Of a stretch of 64,000 bases of DNA, positions 10,870 to 63,882 are shown piece after piece; position 1 is the stretch's first letter, and each line of letters opens with the position of its first letter. The notes beneath the pieces are model-generated. The model was not told where the DNA came from, searched no databases, and saw nothing but the letters and a program-made list of their open reading frames with translations. The stretch lies in the IMG/VR virus record IMGVR_UViG_2162886007_000107, positions 124,001 through 188,000 of that record; one strand, written 5' to 3'. The translations under genes were made by a program, and so were the position numbers.

Positions 10870-13217
10870 CAGACTCCCTTATTCCACGCAGGAATAGTCT
10901 TGGAGCAGCCGGTGTTTCTGTAAATACCGGCGGTGGGCATCCGGGATTCGGGGCCACCAACGCACCAGGCACGCAACAACAATCGTTTACCACCCCAGGC
11001 GCCATGCTCAGGCAGTATCTGAGCGGCCAGGGTGGCGGTGGCGGCGCTACGTCGTCATTCAACTGGAAGTCACACAATGGCGGGTTAGAGTCTAGCGAAG
11101 CATTGGGCAAGATGCTCAATGGCGCAGAGGTCGATGATAAGTCCACGAAAGAGTACTACATCGACAAAGTGGCGCAGTTTATGTTCCACTTCTCTGACTC
11201 GATCATGCGTAACAAACACCAGACTTACTTCTATCAGCACTTCATTGAGGTGCGTGATAACTTCGTCGTAGACCAGCAGCTTCAAACTGTCTGTGCTGTG
11301 AAGAAGGATTTTGTTGAATCCATCATTAAGGTGCATGATTTCAAGCGCGTTGTGGGATTCAACGGATCGATCGTGTTCGGCTACATGCTGATTGATCAAC
11401 TGAAGAAAACTGGTGCTGACGACTGGACGGAGCGTGAGGTGCATTCTGCTTGCCAATTGGCAGTCAGTCACATTATGTCTTTCGAATTCGTCAACTGGTT
11501 AGTGAACACCAAGAAAGGTCGTACGTGGCATAACAGGCTACCGCCTAACGTAGATCGTTCGCTCGGCAATCTGGAGGGTTTGAAAGACCAGTTTGCTGAG
11601 ATGTGGGAAATGTTTGATGTTCCCTTTCCATATGCTAACTTGTCGTTCGCTAAGACGACCAGCGCGCCTATGGAGTATCACCGTGTATTTAACCCAAATG
11701 AATACGGCGATACATTCGGTCGGATCCCTGGGGATTATAACCCAGCGCCCCGCACTGATAATGACAGTGTACTTGCATTAGTAGCTCGAAATGCGCAATT
11801 ACGTAAACGGGTTGTCGAAGAACCCAGGCAAGACGTAGCCGCCGCTCAATACCAGGACATTTATAACGAGGTTGGAATAACTGTGAATACCATTCGCTAC
11901 GATTTCCCCAATATCAATCCGCAGAACATGGATCAATTCGATTGGCGCAAAGAGTTCCGCCCGATCGGTAAAGAAAACCACTACTGGGTCTGTGAAAGTT
12001 CCTGGCTGCACCTCCAGAAGCTTTTCCAACGCCACCCCGAGCAGCGTCAGGAAGAAGCCGTCGGTTCTGGCGTATTCCGCGTAATCGTCATCGATCTGGA
12101 TGGTGCTCGGTCGTGGAACTCCTTCACTGTCCGTAACGAGAAACTCACCGTGCAATATGTGATGAGCAATCCGGAACGACTGCTGCCTCTGCTGGAGAAG
12201 AGTCCAGACGAAGACGCGGTCTATGCTGTACAAGTGACGCCGGTAGAAATTGTCGACGTCAACAACAAGCTGGAAGTTCCAGTTGAAATGGTCAAGGAAC
12301 TGGGCGATGGTATCCCGGTCATTGCTGTAAACCAAACTTTGGTTGCCACCTCTACTCAAGAGCTGCTGACCAACGTTGACCTGACCACCATCAGCCTGAC
12401 CAAAAATCTGAAAGGCACCTCGGCCGTTTCATTCAACCTGGGTGAGTGGGATACCTACTCTCTGAAACCAGATCAGCAGAATGTCAAAGTCCGCATGCTC
12501 CAGGACCTGCCATTCTTGTTCAACGACTCTGGCGATAAAGGCAAGAACGTAAGTATGTATCAGGCTGGTCGTAAGCTGATCAACTACTTCAACGAAAACA
12601 TCCTGCCTGAAGGTCTGTCCAAGTTCATCAACGCTCGTCTGATGAACATTGTTAACGAATGGCTCGTTAACGAAATGGGTTACAACGTGCTGGCCAACAA
12701 AGGTGGTGGCGGTAAGCTGCAAATCTCCAACTTTGTGGGCGACCTGGAAGATCTCAACGGCTACCTGAAAGCCAAAGACCCAATGGCTTACGAACTGTTC
12801 CACGATGGTTCGAAAGACAACTACCTCACCAAGGGTCTGAAGGTTTTCTACTACAACAATCCATTCGGGGTAGACCCGGAAGAAATGGAAGCACTGGATC
12901 GTCTGAAGTCGGAAATCACCTTGTACGTTGTCCGCGACATCTTCATGGTGAACGTGGTTGGCGACAAAGGTCCGTTGTACTCCGAAGAAAATGCTCCTGT
13001 GTACATTCGTCGTAGTGTGTGGCCGGAAATCTTCCGGATGATCGAAGATGCTTTCGACAAGACCACCGAAAACAATTTCGACACCACTGACAAGGTGATT
13101 CGTTACGGTGAGTCGGGTAACTTGTGGCTGTTCAGTTACACCAACGAAGATCGCAACGTTGCAACTCTGCGTCACATCTCGAATGGTAAGCCTCTGGTTC
13201 TGATGGCTCAGAACTAA
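10866..13217 (+). CDS. conserved jumbo-phage hypothetical protein
   Basis: 783 aa, ATGA overlap with the RNAP gene, Gly-rich N-terminus. Confidence 0.8.
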   Translation: MTDSLIPRRNSLGAAGVSVNTGGGHPGFGATNAPGTQQQSFTTPGAMLRQYLSGQGGGGGATSSFNWKSHNGGLESSEALGKMLNGAEVDDKSTKEYYIDKVAQFMFHFSDSIMRNKHQTYFYQHFIEVRDNFVVDQQLQTVCAVKKDFVESIIKVHDFKRVVGFNGSIVFGYMLIDQLKKTGADDWTEREVHSACQLAVSHIMSFEFVNWLVNTKKGRTWHNRLPPNVDRSLGNLEGLKDQFAEMWEMFDVPFPYANLSFAKTTSAPMEYHRVFNPNEYGDTFGRIPGDYNPAPRTDNDSVLALVARNAQLRKRVVEEPRQDVAAAQYQDIYNEVGITVNTIRYDFPNINPQNMDQFDWRKEFRPIGKENHYWVCESSWLHLQKLFQRHPEQRQEEAVGSGVFRVIVIDLDGARSWNSFTVRNEKLTVQYVMSNPERLLPLLEKSPDEDAVYAVQVTPVEIVDVNNKLEVPVEMVKELGDGIPVIAVNQTLVATSTQELLTNVDLTTISLTKNLKGTSAVSFNLGEWDTYSLKPDQQNVKVRMLQDLPFLFNDSGDKGKNVSMYQAGRKLINYFNENILPEGLSKFINARLMNIVNEWLVNEMGYNVLANKGGGGKLQISNFVGDLEDLNGYLKAKDPMAYELFHDGSKDNYLTKGLKVFYYNNPFGVDPEEMEALDRLKSEITLYVVRDIFMVNVVGDKGPLYSEENAPVYIRRSVWPEIFRMIEDAFDKTTENNFDTTDKVIRYGESGNLWLFSYTNEDRNVATLRHISNGKPLVLMAQN

Positions 13218-51650: not shown

Positions 51651-51717
51651 TCCCGTGTATGAATGACAAAGGTTTTTAATAATTGCCTTGTCTCAACTGA
51701 TAGCCGCGGGAGGCTCC

Positions 51718-52833
51718 ATGTTTCAAATAGACACGATCGTAGAAGCGGTAACCAAGCACTCCAAGGTCGAGGACGATCTGGCTGCGGCTATCGTTGGGTT
51801 CTATCTGCTGGACATCAAGTTCATTGCAGTAAACCAACGCAAGAAAGTTCTGGATGCGCTGAAAGAACGTTTGGGTAAAACCTGGACTATCAGCAAGATC
51901 CGTGGTGTCAATCCAAAGATCTTGGGTGATCTGCAATTGCCATCGAAAGAACAACCGGTAACTGGCGATAACGTCAGCCCGACTCACAAAGTCGAGGTCA
52001 CCCCAAATGCCGCTCTGCAATACGAGTGGCCAGAAGGGCAAGGTCCGACAGCCGTCCAACACCAAACCAACACCAACACCATTTCGCACTCCGAGGAAAC
52101 CAGCATGACCAACACCGCCATCACTCTGACCTCCGCCCCTGAAGTTATCCTGGCGCACGTCAAAGAAAACAAGAAGGCCATCAAGGCCCAGGTCGAAGAT
52201 TTCAAAGAGCTGGTCGAATCCGACAAGAAGCGCAGCAAGGCCGTCCACAAGTGGATCGAAGCCGACGAAGATCGTGAAGAAGCCTGGAAAGCTTTCAACG
52301 CTCACCTCGACGGCGCGATCAAGGACAAAGACACCCTGCTGATCACCTTCGTTCGTCTGAGCGAAAAGCCGAAGAAAGAATTCCGCAGCCTGGAAAAAGC
52401 CATGAAGTCCAAAGCGAAAGAAATCGCTGAAGCCTCGGGTGAAGGTCGCAAAGACGTCGCAACCAGCTTCGGCCTGGGCGCAATCGTCGGTGGTCTCGGC
52501 AACATGTTCATGAACGGTTTCACGCCTGGTGCGGCAGTGGGTACCGCAGTGGCCGCTGGCGGCTGCTACTACCTCGGCACCAAGATCGACGAGCAAGGCG
52601 ACGACGACGGCATCGACAAGCGCGCTGGCGCCTTCCTGCTGGGCGGTGGTCTGGGCTACGGCGGTGCAGCTCTCGGCCGCATGGCTGAAGTGCATGTCAT
52701 CGAACAATACGCCGAATGGTTCGGCGGCAAGGAAGACGGCGAAGTTTCCGACAGCGTGTCGGTAGTCATCCACAACAACAACCTTCCGGCCGATAGCACT
52801 CAGAACTCTCTGCGTGCTCTGGGTCTGATCTAA
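51718..52833 (+). CDS. early coiled-coil / glycine-zipper membrane protein; possible internal start at 52105
   Basis: GGAGG RBS + ATG 51718; second GAGGA + ATG 52105; two Gly-rich hydrophobic helices near the C-terminus. Confidence 0.75.
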   Translation: MFQIDTIVEAVTKHSKVEDDLAAAIVGFYLLDIKFIAVNQRKKVLDALKERLGKTWTISKIRGVNPKILGDLQLPSKEQPVTGDNVSPTHKVEVTPNAALQYEWPEGQGPTAVQHQTNTNTISHSEETSMTNTAITLTSAPEVILAHVKENKKAIKAQVEDFKELVESDKKRSKAVHKWIEADEDREEAWKAFNAHLDGAIKDKDTLLITFVRLSEKPKKEFRSLEKAMKSKAKEIAEASGEGRKDVATSFGLGAIVGGLGNMFMNGFTPGAAVGTAVAAGGCYYLGTKIDEQGDDDGIDKRAGAFLLGGGLGYGGAALGRMAEVHVIEQYAEWFGGKEDGEVSDSVSVVIHNNNLPADSTQNSLRALGLI

Positions 52834-52840
52834 CCAGGTA

Positions 52841-52887
52841 TAGCAGAGTACCCCGTGGGGTACTCTGCTAGCACCCTTTTCTTTTTT
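52841..52887 (+). terminator. intrinsic terminator
   Basis: TAGCAGAGTACCC-CGTG-GGGTACTCTGCTA then T-rich tail. Confidence 0.8.
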
Positions 52888-52903
52888 GCTGCGAGGTCTA
52901 TTT

Positions 52904-53113
52904 ATGCAACATGTCGTTTTTGCAGTTCTCACTGTTCTCGGTAGTGCAGCACCGCAAGCGCCACAAGTTACAACCTTCAGAACGGATGACTGTAAGGCAG
53001 GCATGGAACAAGTAGTTCGTAGCTACAGCCTGCAACAGTTTGTTCGTTCTTGGTCCGTTAAAAGCATGACTGCCGATAACGGTAAACTTCATTTGAAAGT
53101 CACTTGTAATTAG
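52904..53113 (+). CDS. small exported protein
   Basis: GAGG RBS; hydrophobic N-terminus; two Cys. Confidence 0.65.
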   Translation: MQHVVFAVLTVLGSAAPQAPQVTTFRTDDCKAGMEQVVRSYSLQQFVRSWSVKSMTADNGKLHLKVTCN

Positions 53114-53123
53114 AGGGTATCCA

Positions 53124-53774
53124 ATGGATCTGTTTAATGTTTTGACTGACGAGGATAAATGCAAATCCATCGTCAAGTACTTCATGCTCAACTTCCTGAA
53201 ACAACCGTTCAACTATCGCCAAACAATCGCGCACAACAAATACCAGTTGGTGTTGGAATATTCCTGCACGTCGCGCGGTCCTAACTACGTCGTCGAGATT
53301 CTCAAGATGACTAGCGGCATGTTCACGCCTGGTCAGTTCAGTCCTGCTACTCAGCAGCGCATGGGCTTCCGTTACTTCCAGGATCGCGATGGTGTTCTGT
53401 CTTTGGGTCATGCCGAATGGCCAGAAGTTCTCGACGTTCTGGAAGACTTCCTGGTTAAGCAGTGCTGTGTCGTAGGTCCTTTGCAAGAGATCATTGCAGA
53501 GAAGACCAAAGACGCTACAGAAGCATCACAAGAGATCATCATCGGTGATGCGACCCTCTACGGAACTGTCGAGTACAATTCCAAAGAAGGCTACAGTCTT
53601 TATCTTGCAGGCGGAGATCCTTCTCGTCCAAGTGAAAAGATCATCATGAAAAGCATGGATACCAGTAAAGACGGTGTGCAATCAGGACTTGTGCGCGGTA
53701 ACCTCAAGGAGCTGGCAGGGAAGATTTTCGATATCCATAAGGACATCTGTAAACAACCCAAACGCGTGGAGTAA
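53124..53774 (+). CDS. hypothetical protein
   Basis: 216 aa, GAGGG RBS. Confidence 0.8.
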   Translation: MDLFNVLTDEDKCKSIVKYFMLNFLKQPFNYRQTIAHNKYQLVLEYSCTSRGPNYVVEILKMTSGMFTPGQFSPATQQRMGFRYFQDRDGVLSLGHAEWPEVLDVLEDFLVKQCCVVGPLQEIIAEKTKDATEASQEIIIGDATLYGTVEYNSKEGYSLYLAGGDPSRPSEKIIMKSMDTSKDGVQSGLVRGNLKELAGKIFDIHKDICKQPKRVE

Positions 53775-53777
53775 ATC

Positions 53778-54080
53778 ATGCCAGAAAGATCTCAATCCTT
53801 TCGTCGCCCCTGGATCTTCAAATCAATCGACGAGCCAGACATTAACTACGTCTGGTTAGCCGAATACATGGCTCAGCACAACCTGACAATGGAAGTTGCT
53901 TTGGAACACCTTTCGCACAAAATGCGAGAGTTCCTGGAGAAGGGTAAGGAAGTCCTGGAGCAACTGGACGGTAGTAATCCAGACCTGCTCAAGAACTGCG
54001 AGGTCTTTGTTGGTAGTTATCAACACGCTGTAGACTTCTACAGTCCCATTCCGTTGGTGCCGATTATAAAGGAAGAGTAA
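53778..54080 (+). CDS. hypothetical protein, W-x-x-Y helical family
   Basis: WLAEYMAQHNLTMEVA. Confidence 0.8.
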   Translation: MPERSQSFRRPWIFKSIDEPDINYVWLAEYMAQHNLTMEVALEHLSHKMREFLEKGKEVLEQLDGSNPDLLKNCEVFVGSYQHAVDFYSPIPLVPIIKEE

Positions 54081-54508
54081 TGTCGGATAAAGACAACAGC
54101 CTAGGCTTAGACGACTTTGGTGAGGACCCTCTTACCAAGCCGGAATTTCTTCGCAAGAAGACTGGTCCTCGTCCAATGCCATGGCTGACGTGGGATAACC
54201 CCAAAGTAAACCCCATGTGGTTGGCCGAGTATATGCATCAACACGATCTCTCTTTAGAGGTGGCGATGGAGCATTGGGCTGTTCACATGGGGCGCTTCAT
54301 AAAGCAGCTTACTAAAACGGTAGAGCTGGTTGAAAGTAGCGACGATAAAACCGTTAACGCCATAAAGGTATTTATCAAAGACCACAAACAAGTCGATGGC
54401 TTTTATGGTGAAATGCCTTTGGTTAATGTTCTCGTTAAGGGTAGCGAATGTCCTGTCCCGTTGAAAAAGAGCTTGCTGCCAGGTTCGAAAAACTCTTCAG
54501 AGACTTAG
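54080..54508 (+). CDS. hypothetical protein, tandem paralog of 53778
   Basis: WLAEYMHQHDLSLEVA; similarity extends to FY..MPLV near the C-terminus. Confidence 0.8.
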   Translation: MSDKDNSLGLDDFGEDPLTKPEFLRKKTGPRPMPWLTWDNPKVNPMWLAEYMHQHDLSLEVAMEHWAVHMGRFIKQLTKTVELVESSDDKTVNAIKVFIKDHKQVDGFYGEMPLVNVLVKGSECPVPLKKSLLPGSKNSSET

Positions 54509-54777
54509 ACCCCAAAAAGGTCGAAGACTTGATGGAAGAGTTGATTGATCACTACACCTACGGGAAGTATGGGTTGTCTGTGATCAGTGAGGTACGCAAA
54601 GTTAAGAAGTTCCAATCTTGCGTATCTATTCAACCTGTTGCTGAAAAGGCGATCCTCGTAAGCCCCTACGGATTCGAGATCACTTCCGTAACCCAACATC
54701 CAAAAGGTGGGGTCCAAGTTATCATGAAGGAGACTACTCGGAACGAACACATCCGTGAACAAAGCAGTCGAGGTTGA
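54448..54777 (+). CDS. hypothetical protein
   Basis: 109 aa, overlaps the previous gene by 61 nt. Confidence 0.6.
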   Translation: MSCPVEKELAARFEKLFRDLDPKKVEDLMEELIDHYTYGKYGLSVISEVRKVKKFQSCVSIQPVAEKAILVSPYGFEITSVTQHPKGGVQVIMKETTRNEHIREQSSRG

Positions 54778-54789
54778 GAGCAAGAACTA

Positions 54790-54819
54790 CTCCCTACTCC
54801 CCGCTAAGGGAGTAGGGAG
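54790..54819 (+). terminator. intrinsic terminator (CCCTAC family)
   Basis: CTCCCTACTCCC-CGCTAA-GGGAGTAGGGAG. Confidence 0.8.
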
Positions 54820-54842
54820 GACTATTTGCTTTTAAAAGAAAC

Positions 54843-54860
54843 TCAAGCCTAAATTATTAC
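54843..54860 (+). promoter_or_regulatory. phage promoter candidate (AAATTATTAC, phiKZ middle-like)
   Basis: Fits the AAanntTAC consensus; near-copy at 8058. Confidence 0.6.
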
Positions 54861-54886
54861 GGTAAGAACATAACGGAATTTTAATA

Positions 54887-55327
54887 ATGACCATGAGTAA
54901 GCGGGACCAGTTATTCAATCAGGTGCTCGGTGATTTCAAAGAGTTTTTCAAAGTTCCTGTTCGTGATGGCATGGCTGACGCTCCTGTATTGAACGTTAGC
55001 AATAACAAGAAGTTTCCTAATCTTAACGGTCGTCATTTCCTGGCTGGTTATTCCACGCCCAATGATGTGAAGAACCGTGCAGAAGGCATTGCGTTTGTAG
55101 AGTACTTCCCTGACAGAATAGGGGTGCTCAATGTGCAGTGCATTATTCATATCTCTCCAACATCCGTACCGTCTGATGTATTAGGCTGTGAGGCAGGGGA
55201 AGATTCGGATCTTACCATTGGTGAGTGTGTGGAGTTATTCCGCATCCTGGGGGATTTCCTCACCAATTGGAAAATGGAACGTGAGTTCCTTACATCGGCA
55301 ATCCCTCCCACTACTACTAAACACTAA
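54887..55327 (+). CDS. hypothetical protein, LxG[RK]xF family
   Basis: PNLNGRHFLAG...GIAFVE. Confidence 0.75.
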   Translation: MTMSKRDQLFNQVLGDFKEFFKVPVRDGMADAPVLNVSNNKKFPNLNGRHFLAGYSTPNDVKNRAEGIAFVEYFPDRIGVLNVQCIIHISPTSVPSDVLGCEAGEDSDLTIGECVELFRILGDFLTNWKMEREFLTSAIPPTTTKH

Positions 55328-55338
55328 GAGAGTTAATC

Positions 55339-55761
55339 ATGCAAAAGTCTATCGAAGTAACCCAAGAATTCACCTTCGCAGAAGTTTACCGCGACCTGGT
55401 CTGGTTCGGTAATGAGTTTCAAAAATGTGCGGCAGTGAAGTTCGAAGCGAGTGGTGATCCATCCATTCCCGCCGATCTGAGCGGCCGTCAGTTCGTGTTC
55501 GAAACCCGCGTCGGTACCAACCGTGCTACTGGTAAATCTCTTGCCGGCATCCTGATCTACGAGGTCAAAGTCGACGGTCAGGAAGGCGAATACTTTGCCA
55601 GTGTTTCTCGCGACCTGGATCTGACAGAAGATCCTGAAGTTATCTTCGCTGATCCAGAGAATATGCTGACAGTAGAAAGTGTCGAAATGCTGCTGCTGGT
55701 GGTTCAGAAATCGGTAATCGAATTCCGCGGTGAACTCGACCAACCTAAGGTTGTTCATTAA
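55339..55761 (+). CDS. hypothetical protein, LxG[RK]xF family
   Basis: ADLSGRQFVFET...AGILIYE. Confidence 0.8.
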   Translation: MQKSIEVTQEFTFAEVYRDLVWFGNEFQKCAAVKFEASGDPSIPADLSGRQFVFETRVGTNRATGKSLAGILIYEVKVDGQEGEYFASVSRDLDLTEDPEVIFADPENMLTVESVEMLLLVVQKSVIEFRGELDQPKVVH

Positions 55762-55773
55762 GGAGGGGTAGTC

Positions 55774-56187
55774 GTGACTACTTCTGAACCTTTCATCGTG
55801 AAATACGCCAAGGACTTCAAACTTTGGCGTATCCACAAAACGTTCCTGAATTTCGGCTTGGCTACTCGTACCAAGCCCGAGGTTCGCTTCATGAAGAACA
55901 ATCAGACTCCAGCTATTCTTCAGGGTCGTGATTTTGTCTTCAGTACTGCTGAGGGTCTTGACTCTCAGAATAATAATCGCCCAGTGATCGGTGTACAAAT
56001 TACAGAACGTATCATGGGCATGGAAGTTGATTTGTGCAAGGTTGTGCAGTTCAAAGACGACAGATCGTCACCTGCGGTTGTAATGTTACTCGGTGGTAAC
56101 GTGTTGGAAGAAGCGTTCATTAAGGACGTTCTCAAAATTGCTGAAGCAGTTATCCGTAACCATCCGGACTACTTCGACCCTAATTAA
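55774..56187 (+). CDS. hypothetical protein, LxG[RK]xF family
   Basis: AILQGRDFVFST...IGVQITE; GGAGG RBS, GTG start. Confidence 0.8.
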   Translation: MTTSEPFIVKYAKDFKLWRIHKTFLNFGLATRTKPEVRFMKNNQTPAILQGRDFVFSTAEGLDSQNNNRPVIGVQITERIMGMEVDLCKVVQFKDDRSSPAVVMLLGGNVLEEAFIKDVLKIAEAVIRNHPDYFDPN

Positions 56188-56198
56188 GGAAGTCACCC

Positions 56199-56633
56199 AT
56201 GAAAACCCCTTTCTACGTTATTCAAGCGGAATCGCGTGCTCCTGGTGAAAGTGTTACCAAAGTCGGCTATCTGTACGTCGACTCCGAATGCGGTATCGTG
56301 TTTGCCGATCGTTTCAACAGCGGTGGTTGGTTCTACACCACCGAAGCCGCCATGCAGCGCTGGGATTTCATCATGAATGAAGAACCCACCAAGTACACCG
56401 CCGGCAGCCTCCCTGGCTATCAGTACGCCATCCCTCACGTGTTGCGCAGCGCTGTTGGTGGTCGGATCGATGTAGACGGCCGCTACGAGTTCACGTTCAA
56501 GCTGATCGAAGTCATCGGTCCTAGCCTGGACAAGATCGAAGTTACCGTGGTTCGTGAGGTGGAAGTTATCGCCATCCAGTTCCACAATGAGTACGACAAG
56601 AAACCGATCATCACCATCAACAACATCAAGTAA
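56199..56633 (+). CDS. hypothetical protein
   Basis: 144 aa, biased codons. Confidence 0.8.
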   Translation: MKTPFYVIQAESRAPGESVTKVGYLYVDSECGIVFADRFNSGGWFYTTEAAMQRWDFIMNEEPTKYTAGSLPGYQYAIPHVLRSAVGGRIDVDGRYEFTFKLIEVIGPSLDKIEVTVVREVEVIAIQFHNEYDKKPIITINNIK

Positions 56634-56641
56634 GGCTTGTC

Positions 56642-57049
56642 ATGGCTAAGGTATCGTTTAAAGAGATCCACACCAATCTGTCTACTTACATGGAAGCTCG
56701 TAAGGAATACCCTGTAGTTACTTTCGAAGACAACGAAACTGTTCTTCGTCAGCTGCGTGGTAAAAGTTTCATGTTCGCTGCCATGAAAGGTGAGGACAAG
56801 CACAAGAAACCACAACTGGGGATCATGGTCGTAGAAAAGACCCCAGTTGGTGGTAATCCAGTCTGTGCACTCACTGCGGCCGATAAAGCCAAAGATCGTC
56901 GATTCAAAGTGCAGTTCCAAGGCAAACTGCTGCTGCTGGACGAGGAAGTCAACGTCCTTCTCCAGCAACTGGGTAACCGTATGAAGGCTGCGGCTCTTAC
57001 CAGTAATCTGGCACAAGGAGCTTCTGATGGCTCGCAAACAACGCAATAA
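56642..57049 (+). CDS. hypothetical protein, LxG[RK]xF family
   Basis: RQLRGKSFMFAA...LGIMVVE. Confidence 0.75.
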   Translation: MAKVSFKEIHTNLSTYMEARKEYPVVTFEDNETVLRQLRGKSFMFAAMKGEDKHKKPQLGIMVVEKTPVGGNPVCALTAADKAKDRRFKVQFQGKLLLLDEEVNVLLQQLGNRMKAAALTSNLAQGASDGSQTTQ

Positions 57050-57287
57050 AGAACCGGCTATTACTCGTACTTGCCCAGACGGTACTCTCATTATTTCTCG
57101 TGAGTGGATTGGCTGGGTTGTTATCTCTGGGACTATTGGTCAGTATTCGGGTATTGAAAGTATCCTGGCCTACGCCACTCGTCGTCTCAATGAAGACGGC
57201 ATTGCCCCAGAAGGCAAGTATGCTTTGGTTTCTTACGACGGTCGTGCGATCGTTACCTACGTAGATAAAGAGGGAGTTACACCGTGA
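57027..57287 (+). CDS. hypothetical protein
   Basis: AGGAG RBS, 86 aa. Confidence 0.7.
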   Translation: MARKQRNKEPAITRTCPDGTLIISREWIGWVVISGTIGQYSGIESILAYATRRLNEDGIAPEGKYALVSYDGRAIVTYVDKEGVTP

Positions 57288-58369
57288 CCGCCAAAAAAGC
57301 TGCTCGTCGTAATGCTGCAAAAACCCTGGATCAGATCAAAGAAGTTTTGTTTATGACTGGGTCTTCTGACGAACAAGTGTTGGAACACATTCGTCAGTTA
57401 GAGCATTACCATTTTTACTTGAAAGAACTTGGTACTGCTGTTGCCACAGATTTGTTTAACGAAAGTACTGTCGTAGGCCGCGCAGAGCTGTTGTTTGGTG
57501 ACCAAGGTCCATTTAAAGCAATGGCATCTGGCAATGGTCGTAACCTGAGAATCACCGGCGGTATTCACGGAACTCGTGAACTGGTTAAGGGCTTTGTTCA
57601 AATTCTGTCTGAGCATGCGCTGGCAGAGGCTGAGAAGCCAAAAGACCTTTTCTACGATGCAGCGGATTTCATGATTCGCAACACGCCGTCTGATGATGCA
57701 AAGCCTCAGACACTCGGACAAAGGCTTTGGCTGCTTAATCAAAGCCAAGGAATGTTTGCGCTCATGCACAAGCATCCGTCCATCAGCAGTAATGGTCATG
57801 CTGTACTGCGCTTCATTCAAAATGTTGTGGAGCAGCAGGTCGAAGAAAACAAACAGCTGACCGGACAAATTGCCACGGCTTGTTTGGCATTGGGCCTCAA
57901 CCCATCAGAACCCAACCGCCTACCAACGGCATTGTCGAACCTCACCACTGCGTTGCGGTTACTCAAGCCATTTACTGGAGATCTGACTGCAGCAACAGCA
58001 ACTTTGAAACCTGCTGAAAGGGTTCTTCCTGCTGAGCCTGCTGTAATGATGGAACCTTTGAGCGCTGGCTCTCATGGTGTGTTCAAGATCACCCAAGAGT
58101 GGTACGACTGGTTCTGGGCTATCGATGATCTGGATGAAAGCCTCAGCTCCAAGATTCTCGAACGCCAAGGTCGCATGCGTCAAGCCATCGACAAACGTGT
58201 CATTGAAAGAATGACGAGCAACAAAGATGGGTGGCCACGTAACCTTTCCTTGATGGTTAACTTCGAAAGCGAAAAAGCAATGGGTCGTCCTGTTGTTCTT
58301 TTCACCGCTCAGGTTAACGACCAGGTCAATAAGAACTTTGGTCCGGCCGCTCTGCAACAACAATTTTAA
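57284..58369 (+). CDS. hypothetical protein
   Basis: 361 aa, GTGA overlap. Confidence 0.8.
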   Translation: MTAKKAARRNAAKTLDQIKEVLFMTGSSDEQVLEHIRQLEHYHFYLKELGTAVATDLFNESTVVGRAELLFGDQGPFKAMASGNGRNLRITGGIHGTRELVKGFVQILSEHALAEAEKPKDLFYDAADFMIRNTPSDDAKPQTLGQRLWLLNQSQGMFALMHKHPSISSNGHAVLRFIQNVVEQQVEENKQLTGQIATACLALGLNPSEPNRLPTALSNLTTALRLLKPFTGDLTAATATLKPAERVLPAEPAVMMEPLSAGSHGVFKITQEWYDWFWAIDDLDESLSSKILERQGRMRQAIDKRVIERMTSNKDGWPRNLSLMVNFESEKAMGRPVVLFTAQVNDQVNKNFGPAALQQQF

Positions 58370-58385
58370 TCATTAGGAGAATGAT

Positions 58386-58961
58386 GTGGATACCGTAACT
58401 CAAGAACTGCAAGCGATGTTGGCTAAGCCGAAAAAGAAATATGGCTTTCCTCCGTTCGTGCTGGATGAGTCCCTGTACCCTATCGAGCAAGAAAACCAGG
58501 TTATCGATTACTTCCGCGACAACTGGGTAGATAACGATAAAAAGATTATCAAGATGGTGAAGCACGTTTACAACTCTGTGCCTCGCTTTATCCAGAAGTC
58601 TTTCCTGGACGTCATCTTGAAGGTAGCTGACCCGAAAAAGATGTTGGTCTTCTACTTTACAGAGAAAGAGCGTTGGACAGAAATCATCAACCAGATGGTT
58701 GCTGAAGGTAACCACGGGGTTATCTACGACGACCACAACGTTTACGGGTTTGTTGTAGAGACTCGTGAGAACTGGTTGAAGGAAGGCGACAAGTGGCACA
58801 AGGATGACGAACGTGAAATCATCAAGCGCTCCTACTACAAGTGGGCTCGTGAAAAAGGTCTTACTCATTTCAAGGGTAAGGTCATGATGTTTCACCACTT
58901 TGGTTTCTCGGGGATGTCTTACTTCTTCGACCACAAAATCGACGATAGCGAAGGCTACTAA
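58386..58961 (+). CDS. hypothetical protein
   Basis: AGGAG RBS, GTG start, 191 aa. Confidence 0.8.
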   Translation: MDTVTQELQAMLAKPKKKYGFPPFVLDESLYPIEQENQVIDYFRDNWVDNDKKIIKMVKHVYNSVPRFIQKSFLDVILKVADPKKMLVFYFTEKERWTEIINQMVAEGNHGVIYDDHNVYGFVVETRENWLKEGDKWHKDDEREIIKRSYYKWAREKGLTHFKGKVMMFHHFGFSGMSYFFDHKIDDSEGY

Positions 58962-58972
58962 GGAGAGCTTCT

Positions 58973-59566
58973 GTGACGTTCTATAAAGGTGGCGAGTTGT
59001 TACCCCTAACGTTGTATCGGGGAGAAGTAGATCACCCCAGTGTCAGCAAGCCACACAGCTTCCCGCGTGCTTTGTACTTCGGTGACTTGGAAACAGCTCA
59101 TGCTTATTCCGATTACCTGGAAAACTCGGGCGATTACAAGACCAGTCGTATCTATCCGGTACACATTGTTCTTAAACGCCCATTTATCAATCAACCGGAA
59201 GATCCGTTTCTGGATATGCCAGAGATTGTTAGTCGTCTTGGTCTGGAAGAAGCTCGTCGTATTGCTAAGCGCTTTGCTAAGTACATCGAAGAGACGGATC
59301 AATGGCGGTATCGTGTCAATTCAGAAGGTCGGTATGATGGGGTAGAACATTACCTTGCCTGTCCGCGTTCTGATGTAAACAATCTGTGTTTCCAGGCGTA
59401 TCGATTCTTCGATAGCCAAATGGAAGTAAATCGTTTGAGAAGGTTAGGGTATGACGGTGCGATCCATGCTGGTAGTGGAAGTGGAAGTGCCGGTAAACCC
59501 GAGTACTGCGTGTTCAACATCGAACAAGTCTTTTCCATACCCGGTCAGTCTTTTCTGAGTAAATGA
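58973..59566 (+). CDS. ADP-ribosyltransferase-fold protein (ART-PolyVal-like, stand-alone)
   Basis: LYRG...LYFG..ETAHAY...IYPVHIVLKRPF...GYDGAIH...EYCVFNIEQV. Confidence 0.65.
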   Translation: MTFYKGGELLPLTLYRGEVDHPSVSKPHSFPRALYFGDLETAHAYSDYLENSGDYKTSRIYPVHIVLKRPFINQPEDPFLDMPEIVSRLGLEEARRIAKRFAKYIEETDQWRYRVNSEGRYDGVEHYLACPRSDVNNLCFQAYRFFDSQMEVNRLRRLGYDGAIHAGSGSGSAGKPEYCVFNIEQVFSIPGQSFLSK

Positions 59567-59925
59567 AAATGGCTAATGATGAGGTATATAAAGCGGGGCT
59601 TGACGAACCTTCCGTCTTTAGTGGTGATGGGGAGCAACCAGTCAGTATCCACTGGCTGGCCTGGTACGTCCGTAACAACCATGGGGCTAGCCTCATGGTA
59701 GCAATGATCGCTGGCAACAATCTGATCCGTCAGCTGTGTAGCGAGGGGCTTCGTGCAGTCTGTACCAATAGCGAACCTATCATGTTTGTAGAAGTGTTCA
59801 TCAATGAGACAGCATTTAGTGTGCCTCGGATGGAATGGGTTATCTGGTACGCCAATCTACACAAGGTTGGTTATACCAGCGCTAACTGGGCAGGAAAGCT
59901 TCAAAACTATATCACTAACAGGTAA
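59563..59925 (+). CDS. hypothetical protein, W-x-x-Y helical family
   Basis: EPSVF...SIHWLAWYVRNNHGASLMVA. Confidence 0.75.
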   Translation: MKMANDEVYKAGLDEPSVFSGDGEQPVSIHWLAWYVRNNHGASLMVAMIAGNNLIRQLCSEGLRAVCTNSEPIMFVEVFINETAFSVPRMEWVIWYANLHKVGYTSANWAGKLQNYITNR

Positions 59926-59944
59926 TCAATAGGAGGTATCCAGG

Positions 59945-60421
59945 ATGGCTGGCTTTAGTTACATTCCTTTGATCAACGAACCGTGCATGTTTACCGGAGT
60001 ACGTTTCCGCTTAAACAGGGATTGGGTTTTCTTCGTTAAACGGTTGGCGGCTGGTATCGCTGTAAACAAAGGTCAGGAAAAGTTTAATGAGAGTGTGAAA
60101 GCATTTGAAGAATTCTTTTCGCCAACCATCCTGGGCTTCAATCAAGACAAATCCCTGCGGTCTCAACACAACTTGCAACACCAACGGGATATGGCTCTCT
60201 TTGTGAACAACATGGAGCTGGTTAAGTCGGGGATGAATGTGATGCACAACATCCATCAAGAGTTGAAAGATGATTTGGATGAAGACGGGTTTGCACAACC
60301 AACTTCAATCCTGACCATGGACAAACTCATCAGTATGCGTTGGGTGATGCATACTGCTCGCGTAGATCGCATGCTTCCTGAAGAAGCCTATGTGCTTGCT
60401 CAGGCTTTAACTAAATCTTAA
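59945..60421 (+). CDS. hypothetical protein
   Basis: GGAGG RBS; EPCMF...NRDWVFF is a weak family match. Confidence 0.75.
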   Translation: MAGFSYIPLINEPCMFTGVRFRLNRDWVFFVKRLAAGIAVNKGQEKFNESVKAFEEFFSPTILGFNQDKSLRSQHNLQHQRDMALFVNNMELVKSGMNVMHNIHQELKDDLDEDGFAQPTSILTMDKLISMRWVMHTARVDRMLPEEAYVLAQALTKS

Positions 60422-60436
60422 TTAGGGGTAACAACC

Positions 60437-61735
60437 GTGTCTGATAAGAATGTAACGAATTCGAACGACCCTGTTGAAAAGATCGAATATTTCGAGGACA
60501 AGCTCCACAGTGAGCATCATGTCCACACTGGATTCGCCAGCATTGCCAAAGCAGCGGATAACTCGCTGTGTGAGCGTGAAGAACTCGCTCTGGGCGATAT
60601 GTCCGACAACGACCTGGCAAAGGAAGTGCTCAAGCTGCAAGAGTACCTGCAACTTCCTAGCGGTATTTATTACGGTGAGCTGCTCAAGGCCATTGTTCAC
60701 CGGCTGCGTTTCCTGAGCGGTCGTCTGCGCCACTATGAAGGCAAAGAAGTCTTCGACATGGAAGACCCAACTCCAAATTTGGATGCTGCAAGGAAACGAG
60801 TTCAGGATTACCTATCGGGCCTTCCCCCAACAAACCTCAACGATATTCTTACTCACCCCGGTGGTGGTGATCCACAGCATTTGGTGGACACTGAAGTTGT
60901 TTTCAGCTCTCCTGCAATGGAAGCCTTTGTTCGTGACAATCCTCAGTTGTTGGAGGTTCGTCTTGGCAAGCTGCGGCCACAAGGTACTTTCCATGGTGGA
61001 CTGTATTACGCGATAGGGAAACCTAATCTCGATTTCAATGGCGATGGTGAATTCACCATGCCTAAAGCCGGGGAGGATATTGGTCCTGAGTATAAATACG
61101 TTTCTGCTCAGTCCACGCTAAACATGTCTCCTGAATTGCAGAAACTGATTGCCGACTCAGCGCCAAAGTTTGATGGTTCTACTTTGCGTGATATCGGCAC
61201 GTCACAGACTGTTCATGTTGAAGTCAGCGGCCCTGGCGCCGACGATCTGGTTCAGTCGGCTAACCTCAAAGACCAGCCTTATCTAGTAAAGGTTGGCACC
61301 ATGTTGGCGTACACCCATCCAGTAGGCGGTCTTCTCGTGAGCGACAATTTCGAGAGGACTCGTCGTGACATTCGTAATACACTGGATGCGCAAGCCGACG
61401 TATACCGTCGCACCAAAACCATGTTTGATCGTCTGTGCTTCTTCCTGGGAATTCAGGATAAAGAAAACCTAGGGGCAATTGCTCACAAGTTAGTCGAGAA
61501 ACACAACGCCACTGGTGAAGGAGTGTTCGTAGTACTTCGTGCGGCTGCGCTCATGGACGGTAAAGCATCTCTCGAAGAAGCTGATAAATGCTACTTTGAG
61601 TTGCGCGATCTGGTACTGGCTATCAATCCAGGTTACGGCAAAGAGCCTAAGTACGACGCCAAGAATAGCCACGAGAGTTTCTTCAAAACAATCGTGCTCC
61701 CTTTTCCTGAAACTGGTAACGAGGAGAAGCCATAA
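60437..61735 (+). CDS. hypothetical multidomain protein
   Basis: 432 aa. Confidence 0.8.
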   Translation: MSDKNVTNSNDPVEKIEYFEDKLHSEHHVHTGFASIAKAADNSLCEREELALGDMSDNDLAKEVLKLQEYLQLPSGIYYGELLKAIVHRLRFLSGRLRHYEGKEVFDMEDPTPNLDAARKRVQDYLSGLPPTNLNDILTHPGGGDPQHLVDTEVVFSSPAMEAFVRDNPQLLEVRLGKLRPQGTFHGGLYYAIGKPNLDFNGDGEFTMPKAGEDIGPEYKYVSAQSTLNMSPELQKLIADSAPKFDGSTLRDIGTSQTVHVEVSGPGADDLVQSANLKDQPYLVKVGTMLAYTHPVGGLLVSDNFERTRRDIRNTLDAQADVYRRTKTMFDRLCFFLGIQDKENLGAIAHKLVEKHNATGEGVFVVLRAAALMDGKASLEEADKCYFELRDLVLAINPGYGKEPKYDAKNSHESFFKTIVLPFPETGNEEKP

Positions 61736-62085
61736 TGGCTGATATCAACCCTGCTGCTGAACTGCCAAAACGCAATGCGGTTGTTTATCCTGTGGGTCGT
61801 GATCCAGAAGGTAAGCAGATCTGGTCTGTAAGTGTTCTCGGTCATTGCACTCTCAACCGTGCTCTGATGACCGAGATCTCGGCAGACGCCTGCGGAGAAG
61901 TAGAAAACGTTGTTTGGGCTACCGAACCTCCTCTTGTTGATGGGACAACTCTCAACAAGGATTGGTTGGTATGGTGTATGTCTACTCACCACATTGGTGA
62001 AGACGAAGCCAGGCACGAAGGCCATCGTCGATTGCAGTTCTTTCAGTTCTGCGCCATTGCACGAGAAAGAAGCAATGGACAGTAA
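61735..62085 (+). CDS. hypothetical protein
   Basis: TAATG coupling, GAGGAG RBS. Confidence 0.75.
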   Translation: MADINPAAELPKRNAVVYPVGRDPEGKQIWSVSVLGHCTLNRALMTEISADACGEVENVVWATEPPLVDGTTLNKDWLVWCMSTHHIGEDEARHEGHRRLQFFQFCAIARERSNGQ

Positions 62086-62380
62086 AGAACCCACCTTGGA
62101 AGGTAGCCTTCGCGGTGGAATGAGTAAGTCCTGGGTGGAGTGGTATCGTGCTCAAGGCTACTCGTTATTGGAAGCTCGTGAAGAAGCCTTACGTCGCCTT
62201 GAACTTAAACGCGATAAAGCGGCTGAATTGGCTTCTAACAAACCGGAACCTTCCCTGCTCAATATTCATGGAAGAAAAAATCCGGAATGGGTGCGGTGGT
62301 ATCGCGATAAAAATGGGGTAACTTTACTTGAGGCTTTGAATGCTCAGGTTAGTCGTATTTCTCAACTGAACAAGCAATAA
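62075..62380 (+). CDS. two-repeat small helical protein (W-x-x-Y family; L7/L12-CTD or EF-Ts-UBA-like motif)
   Basis: ATG 62075; WVEWYRAQGYSLLEA and WVRWYRDKNGVTLLEA. Confidence 0.7.
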   Translation: MDSKEPTLEGSLRGGMSKSWVEWYRAQGYSLLEAREEALRRLELKRDKAAELASNKPEPSLLNIHGRKNPEWVRWYRDKNGVTLLEALNAQVSRISQLNKQ

Positions 62381-62388
62381 ATATGCTG

Positions 62389-62423
62389 CTGTCAGGCTCC
62401 TCCGGGGGCCTGGCAGTCTTTTC
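62389..62423 (+). terminator. intrinsic terminator
   Basis: CTGTCAGGCTCC-TCCG-GGGGCCTGGCAG (G-U pairs) then TCTTTTCT. Confidence 0.7.
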
Positions 62424-62443
62424 TGTCAAATGGGGGAATTGTT

Positions 62444-63004
62444 ATGCCGGATATGGTTAAAGGTGGGTTAATTGTTGCGTTTGCTGTTGGTCTGTTTTTC
62501 TTTTTCCGTTGGCTGATGAAACCGGAACCAGCGCTCAAGAAACGCGCTGAAGAATTCAATCGTCAATATGAGGAAGCCCAAGGCTACCCAACTGACGAAC
62601 AACAACAACCGATCTACGACGAGCGTAAAGAAAAGGTTCGAGATCCAGTACCTGCTTTCCGTGAAGGTTATCCGCAACACCGTACTCGTTCCAACCCTCC
62701 TCCTCGCCCTAGTACTCCACCGCCACCTCCAGGTATGCGTGAAGGCAGTGGTCGTGAAGTACCTCTGACTTCTTCGCGTGATCGTGCTCGTGGTCTGCAC
62801 CATCATCAACATTCTCGCGTATCCCATGATGACAACATGGGTACCGGCGTAATGATGGGTATGATGTTATCCAGTAACAACCACAGCTCTCCTAGCCAGA
62901 GTGCGTGCTCTCCTTCACCTTCCTACGACCGCGACAGTCGTGCGGATGACAATCGTTGCGACGACAATAACAGCAGCTCTTCCAGCAACGATTCGAGTGA
63001 TTAA
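62444..63004 (+). CDS. membrane-anchored, largely disordered protein
   Basis: N-terminal TM; Pro/Arg, His and Ser/Asp low-complexity tail. Confidence 0.75.
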   Translation: MPDMVKGGLIVAFAVGLFFFFRWLMKPEPALKKRAEEFNRQYEEAQGYPTDEQQQPIYDERKEKVRDPVPAFREGYPQHRTRSNPPPRPSTPPPPPGMREGSGREVPLTSSRDRARGLHHHQHSRVSHDDNMGTGVMMGMMLSSNNHSSPSQSACSPSPSYDRDSRADDNRCDDNNSSSSSNDSSD

Positions 63005-63281: not shown

Positions 63282-63539
63282 ATGTGGGACAGCAGTGGAG
63301 GTGGTGGGGTGAGCAATTCAAGTAGGTTGAACTGTAAAGAAGGACTCGGCCTTTTGGGTGTGTTTTCCTTTATCGGTGCAATAATTTATGGTGCCTGTTA
63401 TTTGCAGGATATAGAAAACCAAGATCGTTGCATGGGTAAATACAACACCTCCGCTTGCTTTGAGCTTAAAGCTAAAGAAGCTAAAGCCAAAGAAGAATAC
63501 CTGTTAAAGGTTGAGGGACTTCGTAATGGAAGTAGTTAA
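63282..63539 (+). CDS. single-TM protein with CxxxYxTxxC motif
   Basis: TM LGLLGVFSFIGAIIYGACYL; CMGKYNTSAC. Confidence 0.75.
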   Translation: MWDSSGGGGVSNSSRLNCKEGLGLLGVFSFIGAIIYGACYLQDIENQDRCMGKYNTSACFELKAKEAKAKEEYLLKVEGLRNGSS

Positions 63540-63642: not shown

Positions 63643-63882
63643 ATGAAATCTCTGACTCAAGCATCGTTAAAAGACGGTGTGGTCGTATGTTTGAAAATGG
63701 TCGTTATGATTACAGCGGCTTTTGCAATTGTTTTTGGTGCCGAGCATCTGCGTGACCGTATCAAGGATCAACGCGGCGGGTTTAACGACCAGAACTGCGT
63801 GGGTAGTTTCAACACTATCCCTTGCCACCAGATGAAGATCAACCAGCTCCTCAAAGAGCGGGATCTAAAAGGAGTCCAGTAA
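63643..63882 (+). CDS. single-TM protein with CxxxFxTxxC motif
   Basis: TM VVVCLKMVVMITAAFAIVFGA; CVGSFNTIPC. Confidence 0.75.
   Translation: MKSLTQASLKDGVVVCLKMVVMITAAFAIVFGAEHLRDRIKDQRGGFNDQNCVGSFNTIPCHQMKINQLLKERDLKGVQ

What the first reader, a model, noticed from the sequence alone, without database searches (positions are those of the whole stretch)
53778..62380. Unannotated EP-x(n)-[NS]-x-x-W-x-x-Y helical module repeated in dispersed accessory genes
Seen: 53778 RPWIF..INYVWLAEYMAQHNLTMEVA; 54080 RPMPW..VNPMWLAEYMHQHDLSLEVA; 59563 EPSVF..VSIHWLAWYVRNNHGASLMVA; 62075 twice (EPTL..SKSWVEWYRAQ-GYSLLEA and EPSLL..NPEWVRWYRDKNGVTLLEA); weakly 59945 EPCMF..NRDWVFF. The YR..xG.[ST]LxEA segment resembles the helix-turn-helix of the ribosomal L7/L12 C-terminal domain and the EF-Ts N-terminal UBA-like domain. 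Inference: an expanded interaction module, possibly a mimic that engages translation GTPases or a shared host target.
Basis: partly seen in the sequence, partly recalled or inferred. Interest (0 to 1): 0.6.

Follow-up and report, generated by a model that had tools for sequence, protein, structure and literature searches.

The report
New mini-domain in jumbo-phage accessory genes

Summary
The window is part of a 236-kb metagenomic jumbo phage related to Pseudomonas phage EL. The motif marks a real protein module of about 45 residues. Its consensus is E-P-x-L, about 12 residues, [NS]-x-x-W-[VIL]-x-W-[YF], about 8 residues, [ST]-L-x-x-A.

- **Copies:** nine in six window genes, two of them degenerate, plus three in two genes just downstream.
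- **Significance:** a profile built without any A/B-like sequence still finds genes A and B (E about 1e-5 among 3,667 ORFs).
- **Spread:** a profile of nine copies from this genome finds 76 proteins (E ≤ 1e-3) among 1.84 billion. Carriers include EL gp133 and gp084, an unannotated PaBG ORF and uncultured phage contigs of 184-229 kb. phiKZ, 201phi2-1 and RisingSun gave no match.
- **Fold:** AlphaFold models of F and B share one topology: a short arm, a helix of 9-11 residues, a three-residue turn and a long helix. Both have EL gp133 as best viral structural match.
- **Known families:** none matches in Pfam, PHROGs, NCBIfam or the PDB. The L7/L12, UBA and EF-Ts models find nothing in this genome.

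The conserved residues look like fold determinants, while surfaces and charge vary. I read it as a small scaffold for protein binding. That function is inferred, not shown.

The parts
53778..54080 (+). Gene A (100 aa). One module at 53799-53942 of the RP/W-x-A-E-Y subtype, followed by a third helix.
   Evidence: ORF. The leave-A/B-out profile gives E 3.8e-5 and the A5 profile 3.7e-14. Orthologue P0018.
54080..54508 (+). Gene B (142 aa), a paralogue of A whose start overlaps A's stop. One module at 54161-54307.
   Evidence: The leave-A/B-out profile gives E 1.2e-5. In the AF2 model, pLDDT is above 88 over residues 31-110, with bridges at 35 and 43 and helices 45-55, 59-85 and 89-101. Best BFVD match is EL Q2Z0U8, probability 0.98, rmsd 1.7 Å.
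59563..59925 (+). Gene C (120 aa). Module C1 at 59596-59745 is strong. Module C2 at 59764-59922 is weak and carries an insertion in the arm.
   Evidence: C1 iE 2.7e-13 and C2 iE 0.0026. The G001 orthologue keeps both copies. Strain differences are 12 synonymous to 5 non-synonymous.
59945..60421 (+). Gene D (158 aa). Two degenerate modules: D1 at 59969-60112 keeps only the arm and the start of helix 1; D2 at 60284-60418 covers the full length but has diverged.
   Evidence: hhalign of D-family alignments against A5: D1 probability 93% over 23 columns, D2 probability 90% over 42 columns. With the HMM alone E is only 0.002-0.004.
60437..61735 (+). 432-aa protein of unknown function, with no module of its own. 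A relative (P0040, 434 aa) has two F-type modules fused to its C-terminus. Its stop overlaps the start of gene E.
   Evidence: P0040 sequence and module positions 335-383 and 389-434. No Pfam, PHROG or Atlas lead. Strain differences are 9 synonymous to 0 non-synonymous.
61735..62085 (+). Gene E (116 aa). An N-terminal domain plus one module at 61915-62049 of the W-x-x-W-C subtype.
   Evidence: E 2.4e-10 and 1.3e-6 with the leave-A/B-out profile. Orthologue P0028. In P0006, P0007 and P0011 the same N-domain is fused to two F-type modules.
62075..62380 (+). Gene F (101 aa). Two tandem modules, F1 at 62078-62218 and F2 at 62237-62377. Its start overlaps the end of gene E by 11 nt.
   Evidence: The same gene is called in an independent JGI contig. 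iE 4e-10 and 1.4e-16. AF2 model has pLDDT 84, with helices 18-26, 31-53, 70-80 and 84-100. Best BFVD match is EL gp133, E 2.9e-4, probability 1.00.

Best explanation
**What it is (shown).** The motif marks a previously undescribed protein mini-domain of about 45 residues. It occurs in EL-like jumbo phages and a few other large phages. This phage carries 12 copies in 8 genes: 9 copies in 6 genes inside the window, two of them degenerate.

**Fold (shown as an AlphaFold prediction).** Each copy is predicted to have a short N-terminal arm, a helix of 9-11 residues, a three-residue turn and a long second helix.

**Role of the conserved residues (inferred from the model and from column conservation).**
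- Pro is invariant, Glu is at 83% and Leu at 63% in the arm.
- The N/S before helix 1 and the S/T before helix 2 are helix caps.
- Trp-x-x-Trp-Tyr forms one face of helix 1.
- Ala and Gly/Ala, followed by hydrophobic residues three or four apart, form a single stripe on helix 2.
- Together these make a small aromatic core, so the conserved positions define the fold rather than an active site or a shared binding surface.

**Function (inferred).** The remaining positions and the net charge (-7 to +9) vary freely. The module occurs alone, in tandem, or at either end of unrelated domains, and the copy number differs between relatives. I therefore read it as a compact, robust scaffold that the phage duplicates and diversifies to make small binding or adaptor proteins in its accessory region. 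Partners probably differ between copies. It is not a mimic of L7/L12 or EF-Ts.
For: **Real and significant.** Profile tests inside the genome. The corrected motif is found 5 times against 0.06 expected.

**A family.**
- 76 proteins at E ≤ 1e-3, and 13 at E ≤ 1e-10, among 1.84 billion representatives. Two of the 76, P0015 and P0069, look like repeat-driven false hits.
- Hits in EL at 1.7e-17, 4.7e-11 and 1.5e-4, and in PaBG at 1.5e-14.
- Confirmed in eight uncultured IMG/VR contigs of 184-229 kb, besides EL's own record. Whole-record searches of four of them gave 10, 3, 2 and 4 matches.

**Same fold in divergent subtypes.** The F and B models share one topology. Both have EL gp133 as top BFVD match and the same generic top PDB rows.

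**Conserved positions are core or capping positions.** Column frequencies, and net charge from -7 to +9.

**Modular use.**
- P0040 is a homologue of the window's 432-aa protein with two modules added.
- P0006, P0007 and P0011 are the E-type N-domain plus two modules.
- P0054, P0074 and P0078 are proteins of 600-709 aa with C-terminal modules.
- Gene I and its homologue P0019 combine a module with an RNA polymerase beta fragment.
- One 15-kb contig carries three module genes, with an Acb1-like gene nearby.

**Real coding genes.** 32 synonymous against 8 non-synonymous changes, and no indels, among the 40 best-supported strain differences. Short contigs of one RNA library lie on genes C, D and E.
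Against: - No experiment and no annotated partner domain points to any function.
- The single complex prediction, E with F, gave no verdict.
- Variable surfaces would also fit a purely structural role, such as a folding or solubility cap.
- The basic stretch after W-Y in many copies (R/M, then K/R-rich) could be a shared functional patch.
- Genes of the accessory region could not be assigned to an expression class.
Confidence: 0.45

Rival explanations
1. Common docking tag. All copies bind one shared hub, either a phage protein or complex such as its RNA polymerase, or a host protein. The module would then tether otherwise unrelated accessory proteins to that hub.
For: - The module sits at the N- or C-terminus of unrelated domains.
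- E 83%, P 100% and a basic residue at column 57 (67%) are conserved and could be surface-exposed.
- Gene I joins the module to a copy of the phage's own RNA polymerase beta segment.
- The genes for the 432-aa protein, E and F are translationally coupled, and relatives have them fused.
Against: - Net charge ranges from -7 to +9, and surface columns are near random.
- No candidate hub tracks the module. The phage chaperonin is present in RisingSun, which lacks the module, and absent from PaBG, which has it.
- The E+F complex prediction gave no verdict.
Confidence: 0.2
2. Nucleic-acid-binding helix-turn-helix. The modules would bind DNA or RNA as small regulators.
For: - The topology is helix-turn-helix.
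- Many H-type second copies are strongly basic after W-Y (R-x-R-K-K-V-S), and some copies have net charge up to +9.
- Weak structural rows include the N-terminal hairpins of IHF and HU, and the engrailed helix-turn-helix motif (Z 3.6-4.4).
Against: - Many copies are acidic or neutral.
- There is no third recognition helix in F's modules.
- No helix-turn-helix family was hit consistently in Pfam: one Tc5 transposase hit among 100 sequences.
- The Z values are at noise level for helical models (notes).
Confidence: 0.12
3. One reading: a mimic of the L7/L12 C-terminal domain or of the EF-Ts/UBA domain that engages translation GTPases.
For: - The turn motif G-x-[ST/G]-L-K-E-A in some copies reads like the L12 G-L-G-L-K-E-A-K segment.
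- One sub-threshold PF00542 hit (P0047, E 0.0023).
- One Atlas row named as an L7/L12 C-terminal domain protein, at TM 0.37.
Against: - PF00542, PF00627 and PF00889 find nothing in the genome at E ≤ 1.
- 0 of 100 modules hit these families.
- There is no PDB sequence match.
- These folds are absent from the top 50 rows for both models.
- The predicted module lacks the L12 beta-sheet and the third UBA helix.
Confidence: 0.03
4. A chance or compositional motif with no shared ancestry.
For: The module is short, and a few candidate copies are marginal (D1, C2, and the look-alike in the 57284 ORF).
Against: - Profile E-values reach 1e-17 in unrelated genomes.
- The motif is found 5 times against 0.06 expected by shuffling.
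- The predicted folds are concordant.
Confidence: 0.01

Closest known systems
Pseudomonas phage EL gp133 (YP_418166, UniProt Q2Z0U8) and gp084 (YP_418117, probably UniProt Q2Z0Z7), both annotated as hypothetical proteins
   Same: Same module: two copies in gp133 and one at the C-terminus of gp084. Profile E-values are 1.7e-17 and 4.7e-11. gp133 is the best viral structural match for both models. As in the window, the genes lie in clusters of small hypothetical genes.
   Different: Sequence identity is only about 30-40% within the module. EL has about 4-5 copies against 12 here. Neither EL protein has a described function, so they give a name but no mechanism.
Ribosomal protein L7/L12 C-terminal domain (Pfam PF00542)
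   Same: A helix, a glycine-containing turn and a helix starting L-K-E-A. One family member gives a sub-threshold hit over 25 residues.
   Different: The L12 domain is an alpha/beta fold with a three-stranded sheet, while the module is an arm plus two helices. The Pfam model finds nothing in this genome or in 100 modules. No fold match was found.
UBA domain and the EF-Ts N-terminal domain (PF00627, PF00889)
   Same: Small helical domains with a glycine-containing loop between the first two helices.
   Different: UBA is a three-helix bundle with its own loop motif. The models find nothing here, and there is no fold match.
Generic helical-hairpin segments in solved structures: KefC C-terminal region 519-560, the C-terminal domain of pyrroline-5-carboxylate reductase, the N-terminal hairpins of IHF and HU, and the Get5 and rabies P dimerisation domains
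   Same: The short-helix, turn, long-helix geometry. Z is 3.6-5.5 with rmsd about 2 Å over about 40 residues, for both models. Several of these are protein-protein contact elements.
   Different: The Z values are below what the tool's own notes treat as meaningful for helical models. There is no sequence signal. None has the EP arm or the W-x-x-W-Y face.

Membership tests
Ribosomal_L12 C-terminal domain (PF00542) | Match to the family HMM at or above the gathering score (25.9 bits) | tested here: not met
   No match at E ≤ 1 in the six-frame genome, while the model rings in 12 of 14 control genomes. 0 of 100 module sequences match. One relative, P0047, scores 18.7 bits, below the cut-off.
Ribosomal_L12 C-terminal domain (PF00542) | Alpha/beta fold with a three-stranded sheet packed on the helices (from general knowledge of L7/L12 structures) | tested here: not met
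   The AF2 models show only single-residue bridges and two helices per module. No L12 chain appears in the top 50 of the Foldseek or VIA-align searches.
UBA (PF00627) and the EF-Ts N-terminal domain (PF00889) | HMM match, and a compact three-helix bundle | tested here: not met
   No match at E ≤ 1. F's modules have two helices each. No UBA or EF-Ts chain is among the structural matches. The one row that contains a UBA derivative (4dbg_B) has probability 0.04.
Helix-turn-helix DNA-binding domains | A three-helix core with a recognition helix, and a match to a helix-turn-helix family model | tested here: inconclusive
   Only one of 100 modules touches a helix-turn-helix model (HTH_Tnp_Tc5, E 0.011). 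The engrailed motif scores Z 3.6. Binding itself cannot be tested with these tools.
The new EP-arm / W-x-x-W-Y hairpin family (EL gp133-like; unnamed) | Significant match to the family profile built from sequences of other subfamilies | tested here: met
   - A, B, C1, E, F1, F2, H1, H2 and I score E from 1e-5 to 1e-17.
- D1 and D2 are met only by profile-profile comparison, at probabilities 93% and 90%.
- C2 is weak, at 0.001-0.05.
- The segment in the 57284 ORF is not met.
The new EP-arm / W-x-x-W-Y hairpin family (EL gp133-like; unnamed) | Signature residues: P (100%), the first W (100%), A in helix 2 (95%), N/S cap (96%), W/Y pair (88% and 83%) | tested here: met
   Column frequencies of the 100-sequence alignment A5. 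The A/B subtype replaces E-P with R-P and the second W with E.
The new EP-arm / W-x-x-W-Y hairpin family (EL gp133-like; unnamed) | Common predicted fold: arm, short helix, three-residue turn, long helix | tested here: met
   Models of F (pLDDT 84) and B (pLDDT above 88 in the domain). Both have EL gp133 as best BFVD hit. No experimental structure exists.

The most novel reading that the evidence does not exclude
The modules form a phage-private docking code. Copies would pair with one another, or with one phage hub such as the phage's own multisubunit RNA polymerase (suggested by the fusion to a beta-subunit fragment in gene I). In that way EL-like phages would assemble or localise a changing set of accessory proteins through one tiny, interchangeable domain.
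Probability: 0.15. Interest if true: 0.7.

Novelty: new variant of a known kind. Interest (0 to 1): 0.42.

Why it matters
Most genes of jumbo phages are unexplained ORFans. This module links at least eight such genes in this phage into one domain family. It also links gp133, gp084 and probably gp092 in the cultivable model phage EL, an unannotated ORF in PaBG, and dozens of metagenomic proteins.

That gives a defined, testable unit of 45 residues, with a cultured system (EL on Pseudomonas aeruginosa) in which to ask what it binds. If it proves to be a diversifying binder scaffold or a docking tag, it would explain how these phages build and reshuffle accessory proteins. A very small, stable helical scaffold could also be useful for protein engineering.

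If it is only a structural cap, the finding is a new domain of unknown function and little more.

Tried and rejected
- **Close DNA relatives:** megablast of 53000-63000 against the phage collection found nothing.
- **Word-index protein search with F:** only the protein itself came back.
- **The search for related loci:** A degenerate DNA pattern worked instead.
- **Atlas searches:** by features and by structure for F and for the 432-aa protein, with no usable lead.
- **Complex prediction of E with F:** chosen because relatives have them fused and the genes are translationally coupled. Score 0.00, no verdict. This is not evidence either way.
- **Phage chaperonin as a shared partner:** PF00118 is present in all six EL-like records that carry the module, but also in RisingSun, which lacks it, and is absent from PaBG, which has it. 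It tracks lineage, not the module.
- **PhiKZ014-type ribosome binders:** the EL homologue is gp099, a different protein (PMC10914614).
- **Literature searches:** nothing on EL gp133 or gp084, or on EL expression timing.
- **The segment in the 57284 ORF (58046-58183):** rejected as a copy.
- **DNA-level repeats:** none beyond the W-V-x-W-Y-R codons.

Full report
**Setting**

The window is bases 124001-188000 of a 236,430-bp virus record. The same genes occur on a 236.5-kb contig of a JGI metagenome. Near-identical strains occur in soil, rhizosphere and indoor metagenomes.

A 1,191-aa virion protein is 40-42% identical to that of Pseudomonas phage EL and its relatives, and 36% to Erwinia phages Joad and RisingSun. 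The genome also encodes a GroEL-like chaperonin, as EL does. It is therefore an uncultured jumbo phage of the EL lineage.

The region 53-64 kb is a run of small genes on the + strand. Almost none has a database match.

**Observation**

The formula in the title is off by one residue. The real spacing is W-x-x-[WE]-Y, so the literal pattern finds nothing. The corrected pattern finds 5 matches in the genome against 0.06 expected from shuffles.

- An HMM built from the five clear segments found two further genes outside the seed set and outside the window (E 3.9e-8 and 7.6e-5).
- The A/B pair alone links only weakly to the rest (0.23 and 0.86). F's two copies alone reach H (1.9e-7), C (0.0046) and I (0.023).
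- The decisive test used 99 domain sequences collected from a public library. After removing every A/B-like one, the profile still hit B at 1.2e-5 and A at 3.8e-5 among 3,667 ORFs.

**Inventory in this genome**

*In the window:*
- A, one copy
- B, one copy
- C, two copies, the second weak
- D, two degenerate copies
- E, one copy
- F, two copies

*Outside the window:*
- Gene H at genome 193630-193950, two copies
- Gene I at genome 194324-194947, one copy

D needed profile-profile comparison with orthologues from two related phage records. D1 aligns only over the arm and the start of helix 1 (probability 93%, 23 columns). D2 aligns over the whole module (probability 90%, 42 columns). A look-alike in the 361-aa ORF at 57284 is not supported. 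At DNA level the copies share nothing but the W-V-x-W-Y-R codons, so the duplications are old.

**A family beyond this genome**

A profile of nine copies from this genome, scored against 1.84 billion representative proteins, gave 76 hits at E ≤ 1e-3 and 13 at E ≤ 1e-10. Two of them, P0015 and P0069, look like repeat-driven false hits.

- Most are proteins of about 100 aa with two copies.
- They come from tiny clusters of uncultured sequences whose longest contigs are 110-240 kb.

Among cultured phages, BLAST searches with F and H hit only EL-like Pseudomonas phages and PaBG. In EL the carriers are gp133 (two copies), gp084 and weakly gp092. In PaBG it is an ORF that the record does not annotate.

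- phiKZ, 201phi2-1 and RisingSun gave no match.
- Copy number differs widely among carriers: 10 significant profile matches here and 10 in G001, 5 in EL, 4, 3 and 2 in three other contigs, and 1 in PaBG.
- In G001 the neighbourhood is syntenic: an ART-like gene, then the C, D and E/F genes.

**Fold**

AlphaFold2 with a 32-row alignment gave F a mean pLDDT of 84. Each module has a short arm with single-residue bridges, a helix of 9-11 residues, a three-residue turn and a long helix.

B, from the most divergent subtype, gave pLDDT above 88 over residues 31-110. It has the same order of elements plus a third helix.

- Both models have EL gp133 (Q2Z0U8) as best match among predicted viral structures. 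For B, probability is 0.98 with rmsd 1.7 Å over 52 columns. For F, E is 2.9e-4 with probability 1.00.
- Both have the same generic top rows in the PDB, at Z 4.9-5.5: the C-terminal hairpin of KefC, CCDC90B and the C-terminal domain of ProC.
- The tool's own notes place such Z values within the noise for helical models. Foldseek against the PDB found nothing at E ≤ 0.001.

So the predicted folds agree with each other and match no characterised fold.

**Known families**

- Pfam, PHROGs and NCBIfam give nothing for the window proteins.
- Pfam gives nothing consistent for 100 isolated modules.
- A profile search of all PDB sequences gives only noise.

PF00542 (L12 C-terminal domain), PF00627 (UBA) and PF00889 (EF-Ts) find nothing in the genome at E ≤ 1, while ringing in the control genomes.

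The only traces are one sub-threshold L12 hit over 25 residues in one distant member and an Atlas row at TM 0.37. I read the resemblance as a shared capping pattern at a helix-turn-helix junction.

**What the conservation says**

In the 100-sequence alignment the informative columns are as follows:
- **Arm:** E (83%), P (100%), L (63%).
- **Before the first helix:** G (53%), then N/S (96%).
- **Helix 1:** W (100%), V/I/L, W (88%), Y/F (92%), R/M.
- **Turn and start of helix 2:** S/T (69%), L, A (95%), G/A.
- **Helix 2:** a basic residue (67%), L/I/M (83%) and a further hydrophobic position. These are spaced 3-4-4-3, as on one face of a helix.

N/S-P-x-W and S/T-L-x-E-A are classical helix N-caps; this reading rests on established knowledge of helix capping. 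All strongly conserved positions can thus be assigned to a small aromatic core or to capping. The other columns are close to random, and net charge runs from -7 to +9.

**Architecture**

The module occurs in several forms:
- Alone, in proteins of 51-59 aa (P0070, P0057).
- In tandem.
- At the C-terminus of unrelated proteins of 600-709 aa (P0054, P0074, P0078).
- In the middle of a protein (P0047).
- At the N-terminus (P0023, P0024, P0027, P0063).

Two fusions concern the window directly. P0040 is a homologue of the 432-aa protein (60437-61735) with two F-type modules added. P0006, P0007 and P0011 are the E-type N-domain with two F-type modules. In the window the genes for the 432-aa protein, E and F overlap start to stop.

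Gene I joins a module to a 56-residue copy of the phage's own RNA polymerase beta segment, 44% identical to genome 87790-87954. This architecture is conserved in P0019.

One 15-kb contig carries three module genes, with an Acb1-like gene nearby.

**Are the genes real?**

Among the 40 best-supported differences between strains in three metagenomes, 32 are synonymous and 8 are not. No insertion or deletion was seen across 2.9 kb. Short contigs of one RNA library lie on genes C, D and E. DNA carry-over cannot be excluded there.

**Interpretation**

*Shown:* a real, previously unannotated domain family with a consistent predicted fold. It is expanded in this phage and unrelated, by every test available, to L7/L12, EF-Ts or UBA.

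*Inferred:* because conservation is confined to fold determinants while surfaces, charge, context and copy number vary, the module most likely serves as a small stable scaffold. The phage duplicates and diversifies it to make binding or adaptor proteins in its accessory region (confidence 0.45).

*Main rivals:*
- A docking tag for one shared hub (0.2). The RNA polymerase fragment fusion is the only hint of which hub.
- Nucleic-acid binding (0.12).

The complex prediction for E with F returned no verdict and is not used. The chaperonin does not co-vary with the module.

**Novelty and score**

The family is new in the sense that no database names it and no paper found here discusses its cultured members. 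In kind, it is one more small helical domain expanded in phage accessory genes, with unknown function. That is useful for annotation and gives a tractable experiment in phage EL, but it is not yet surprising in mechanism. Interest: 0.42.

Noticed in passing
outside the window: L003:6324-6947 (genome 194324-194947), compared with genome 87790-87954: A 207-aa protein joins one module to a 56-residue copy (44% identity) of the phage's own RNA polymerase beta segment. That segment matches rpoB region 1015-1049 of TIGR02013 and phrog_3295. The same architecture is conserved in a second phage (P0019). It could be a decoy or an accessory piece of the phage's split polymerase.
   Followed up: partly
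window 58973-59566 (+): A 197-aa protein resembling the ADP-ribosyltransferase domain of polyvalent proteins (PF18760, E 1.4e-4, below the cut-off; phrog_8642, E 1.6e-26). It lies directly upstream of module genes C and D, and the arrangement is conserved in G001.
   Followed up: partly
window 55339-55761, 55774-56187, 56642-57049; also 63282-63539 and 63643-63882: Two further small paralogue sets. Three proteins of about 140 aa are weakly similar to one another (BLASTP 1e-4 to 2e-5). Two proteins of about 80 aa, with an N-terminal hydrophobic segment and conserved cysteines, match at 1.6e-5. The region is rich in old tandem duplications.
   Followed up: partly
L003:5630-5950 (gene H) and relatives P0010, P0012, P0014, P0017, P0022, P0034: The H-type two-module proteins end in a conserved C-terminal tail with one or two aromatic residues at the very end (for example H-L-T-x-W-W). 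This could be a separate short binding motif.
   Followed up: no
L002:2785-3138 (NC_022096, module at record 10752-10874, reverse strand): Phage PaBG has a 117-aa ORF with a clear module (E 1.5e-14) lying between gp018 and gp017. The record does not annotate it.
   Followed up: partly
outside the window: genome 203081-204770; EL 149158-150834: A GroEL-like chaperonin gene lies about 6-10 kb from the module genes in this genome, in EL and in four related IMG/VR contigs. RisingSun has the chaperonin but not the module, so this reflects shared synteny of the lineage rather than a functional link.
   Followed up: yes
window 51676-53004 (-) and 51688-52833 (+): Two long ORFs (442 and 381 aa) overlap almost fully on opposite strands, and local GC rises to 0.52. 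Neither strand has a family match. Which strand codes was not resolved.
   Followed up: no
window 59500-62400 in runs X2 and X3: Strain variants 95-99% identical occur in indoor and rhizosphere metagenomes, on contigs up to 227 kb. Differences are mostly third-position transitions.
   Followed up: partly
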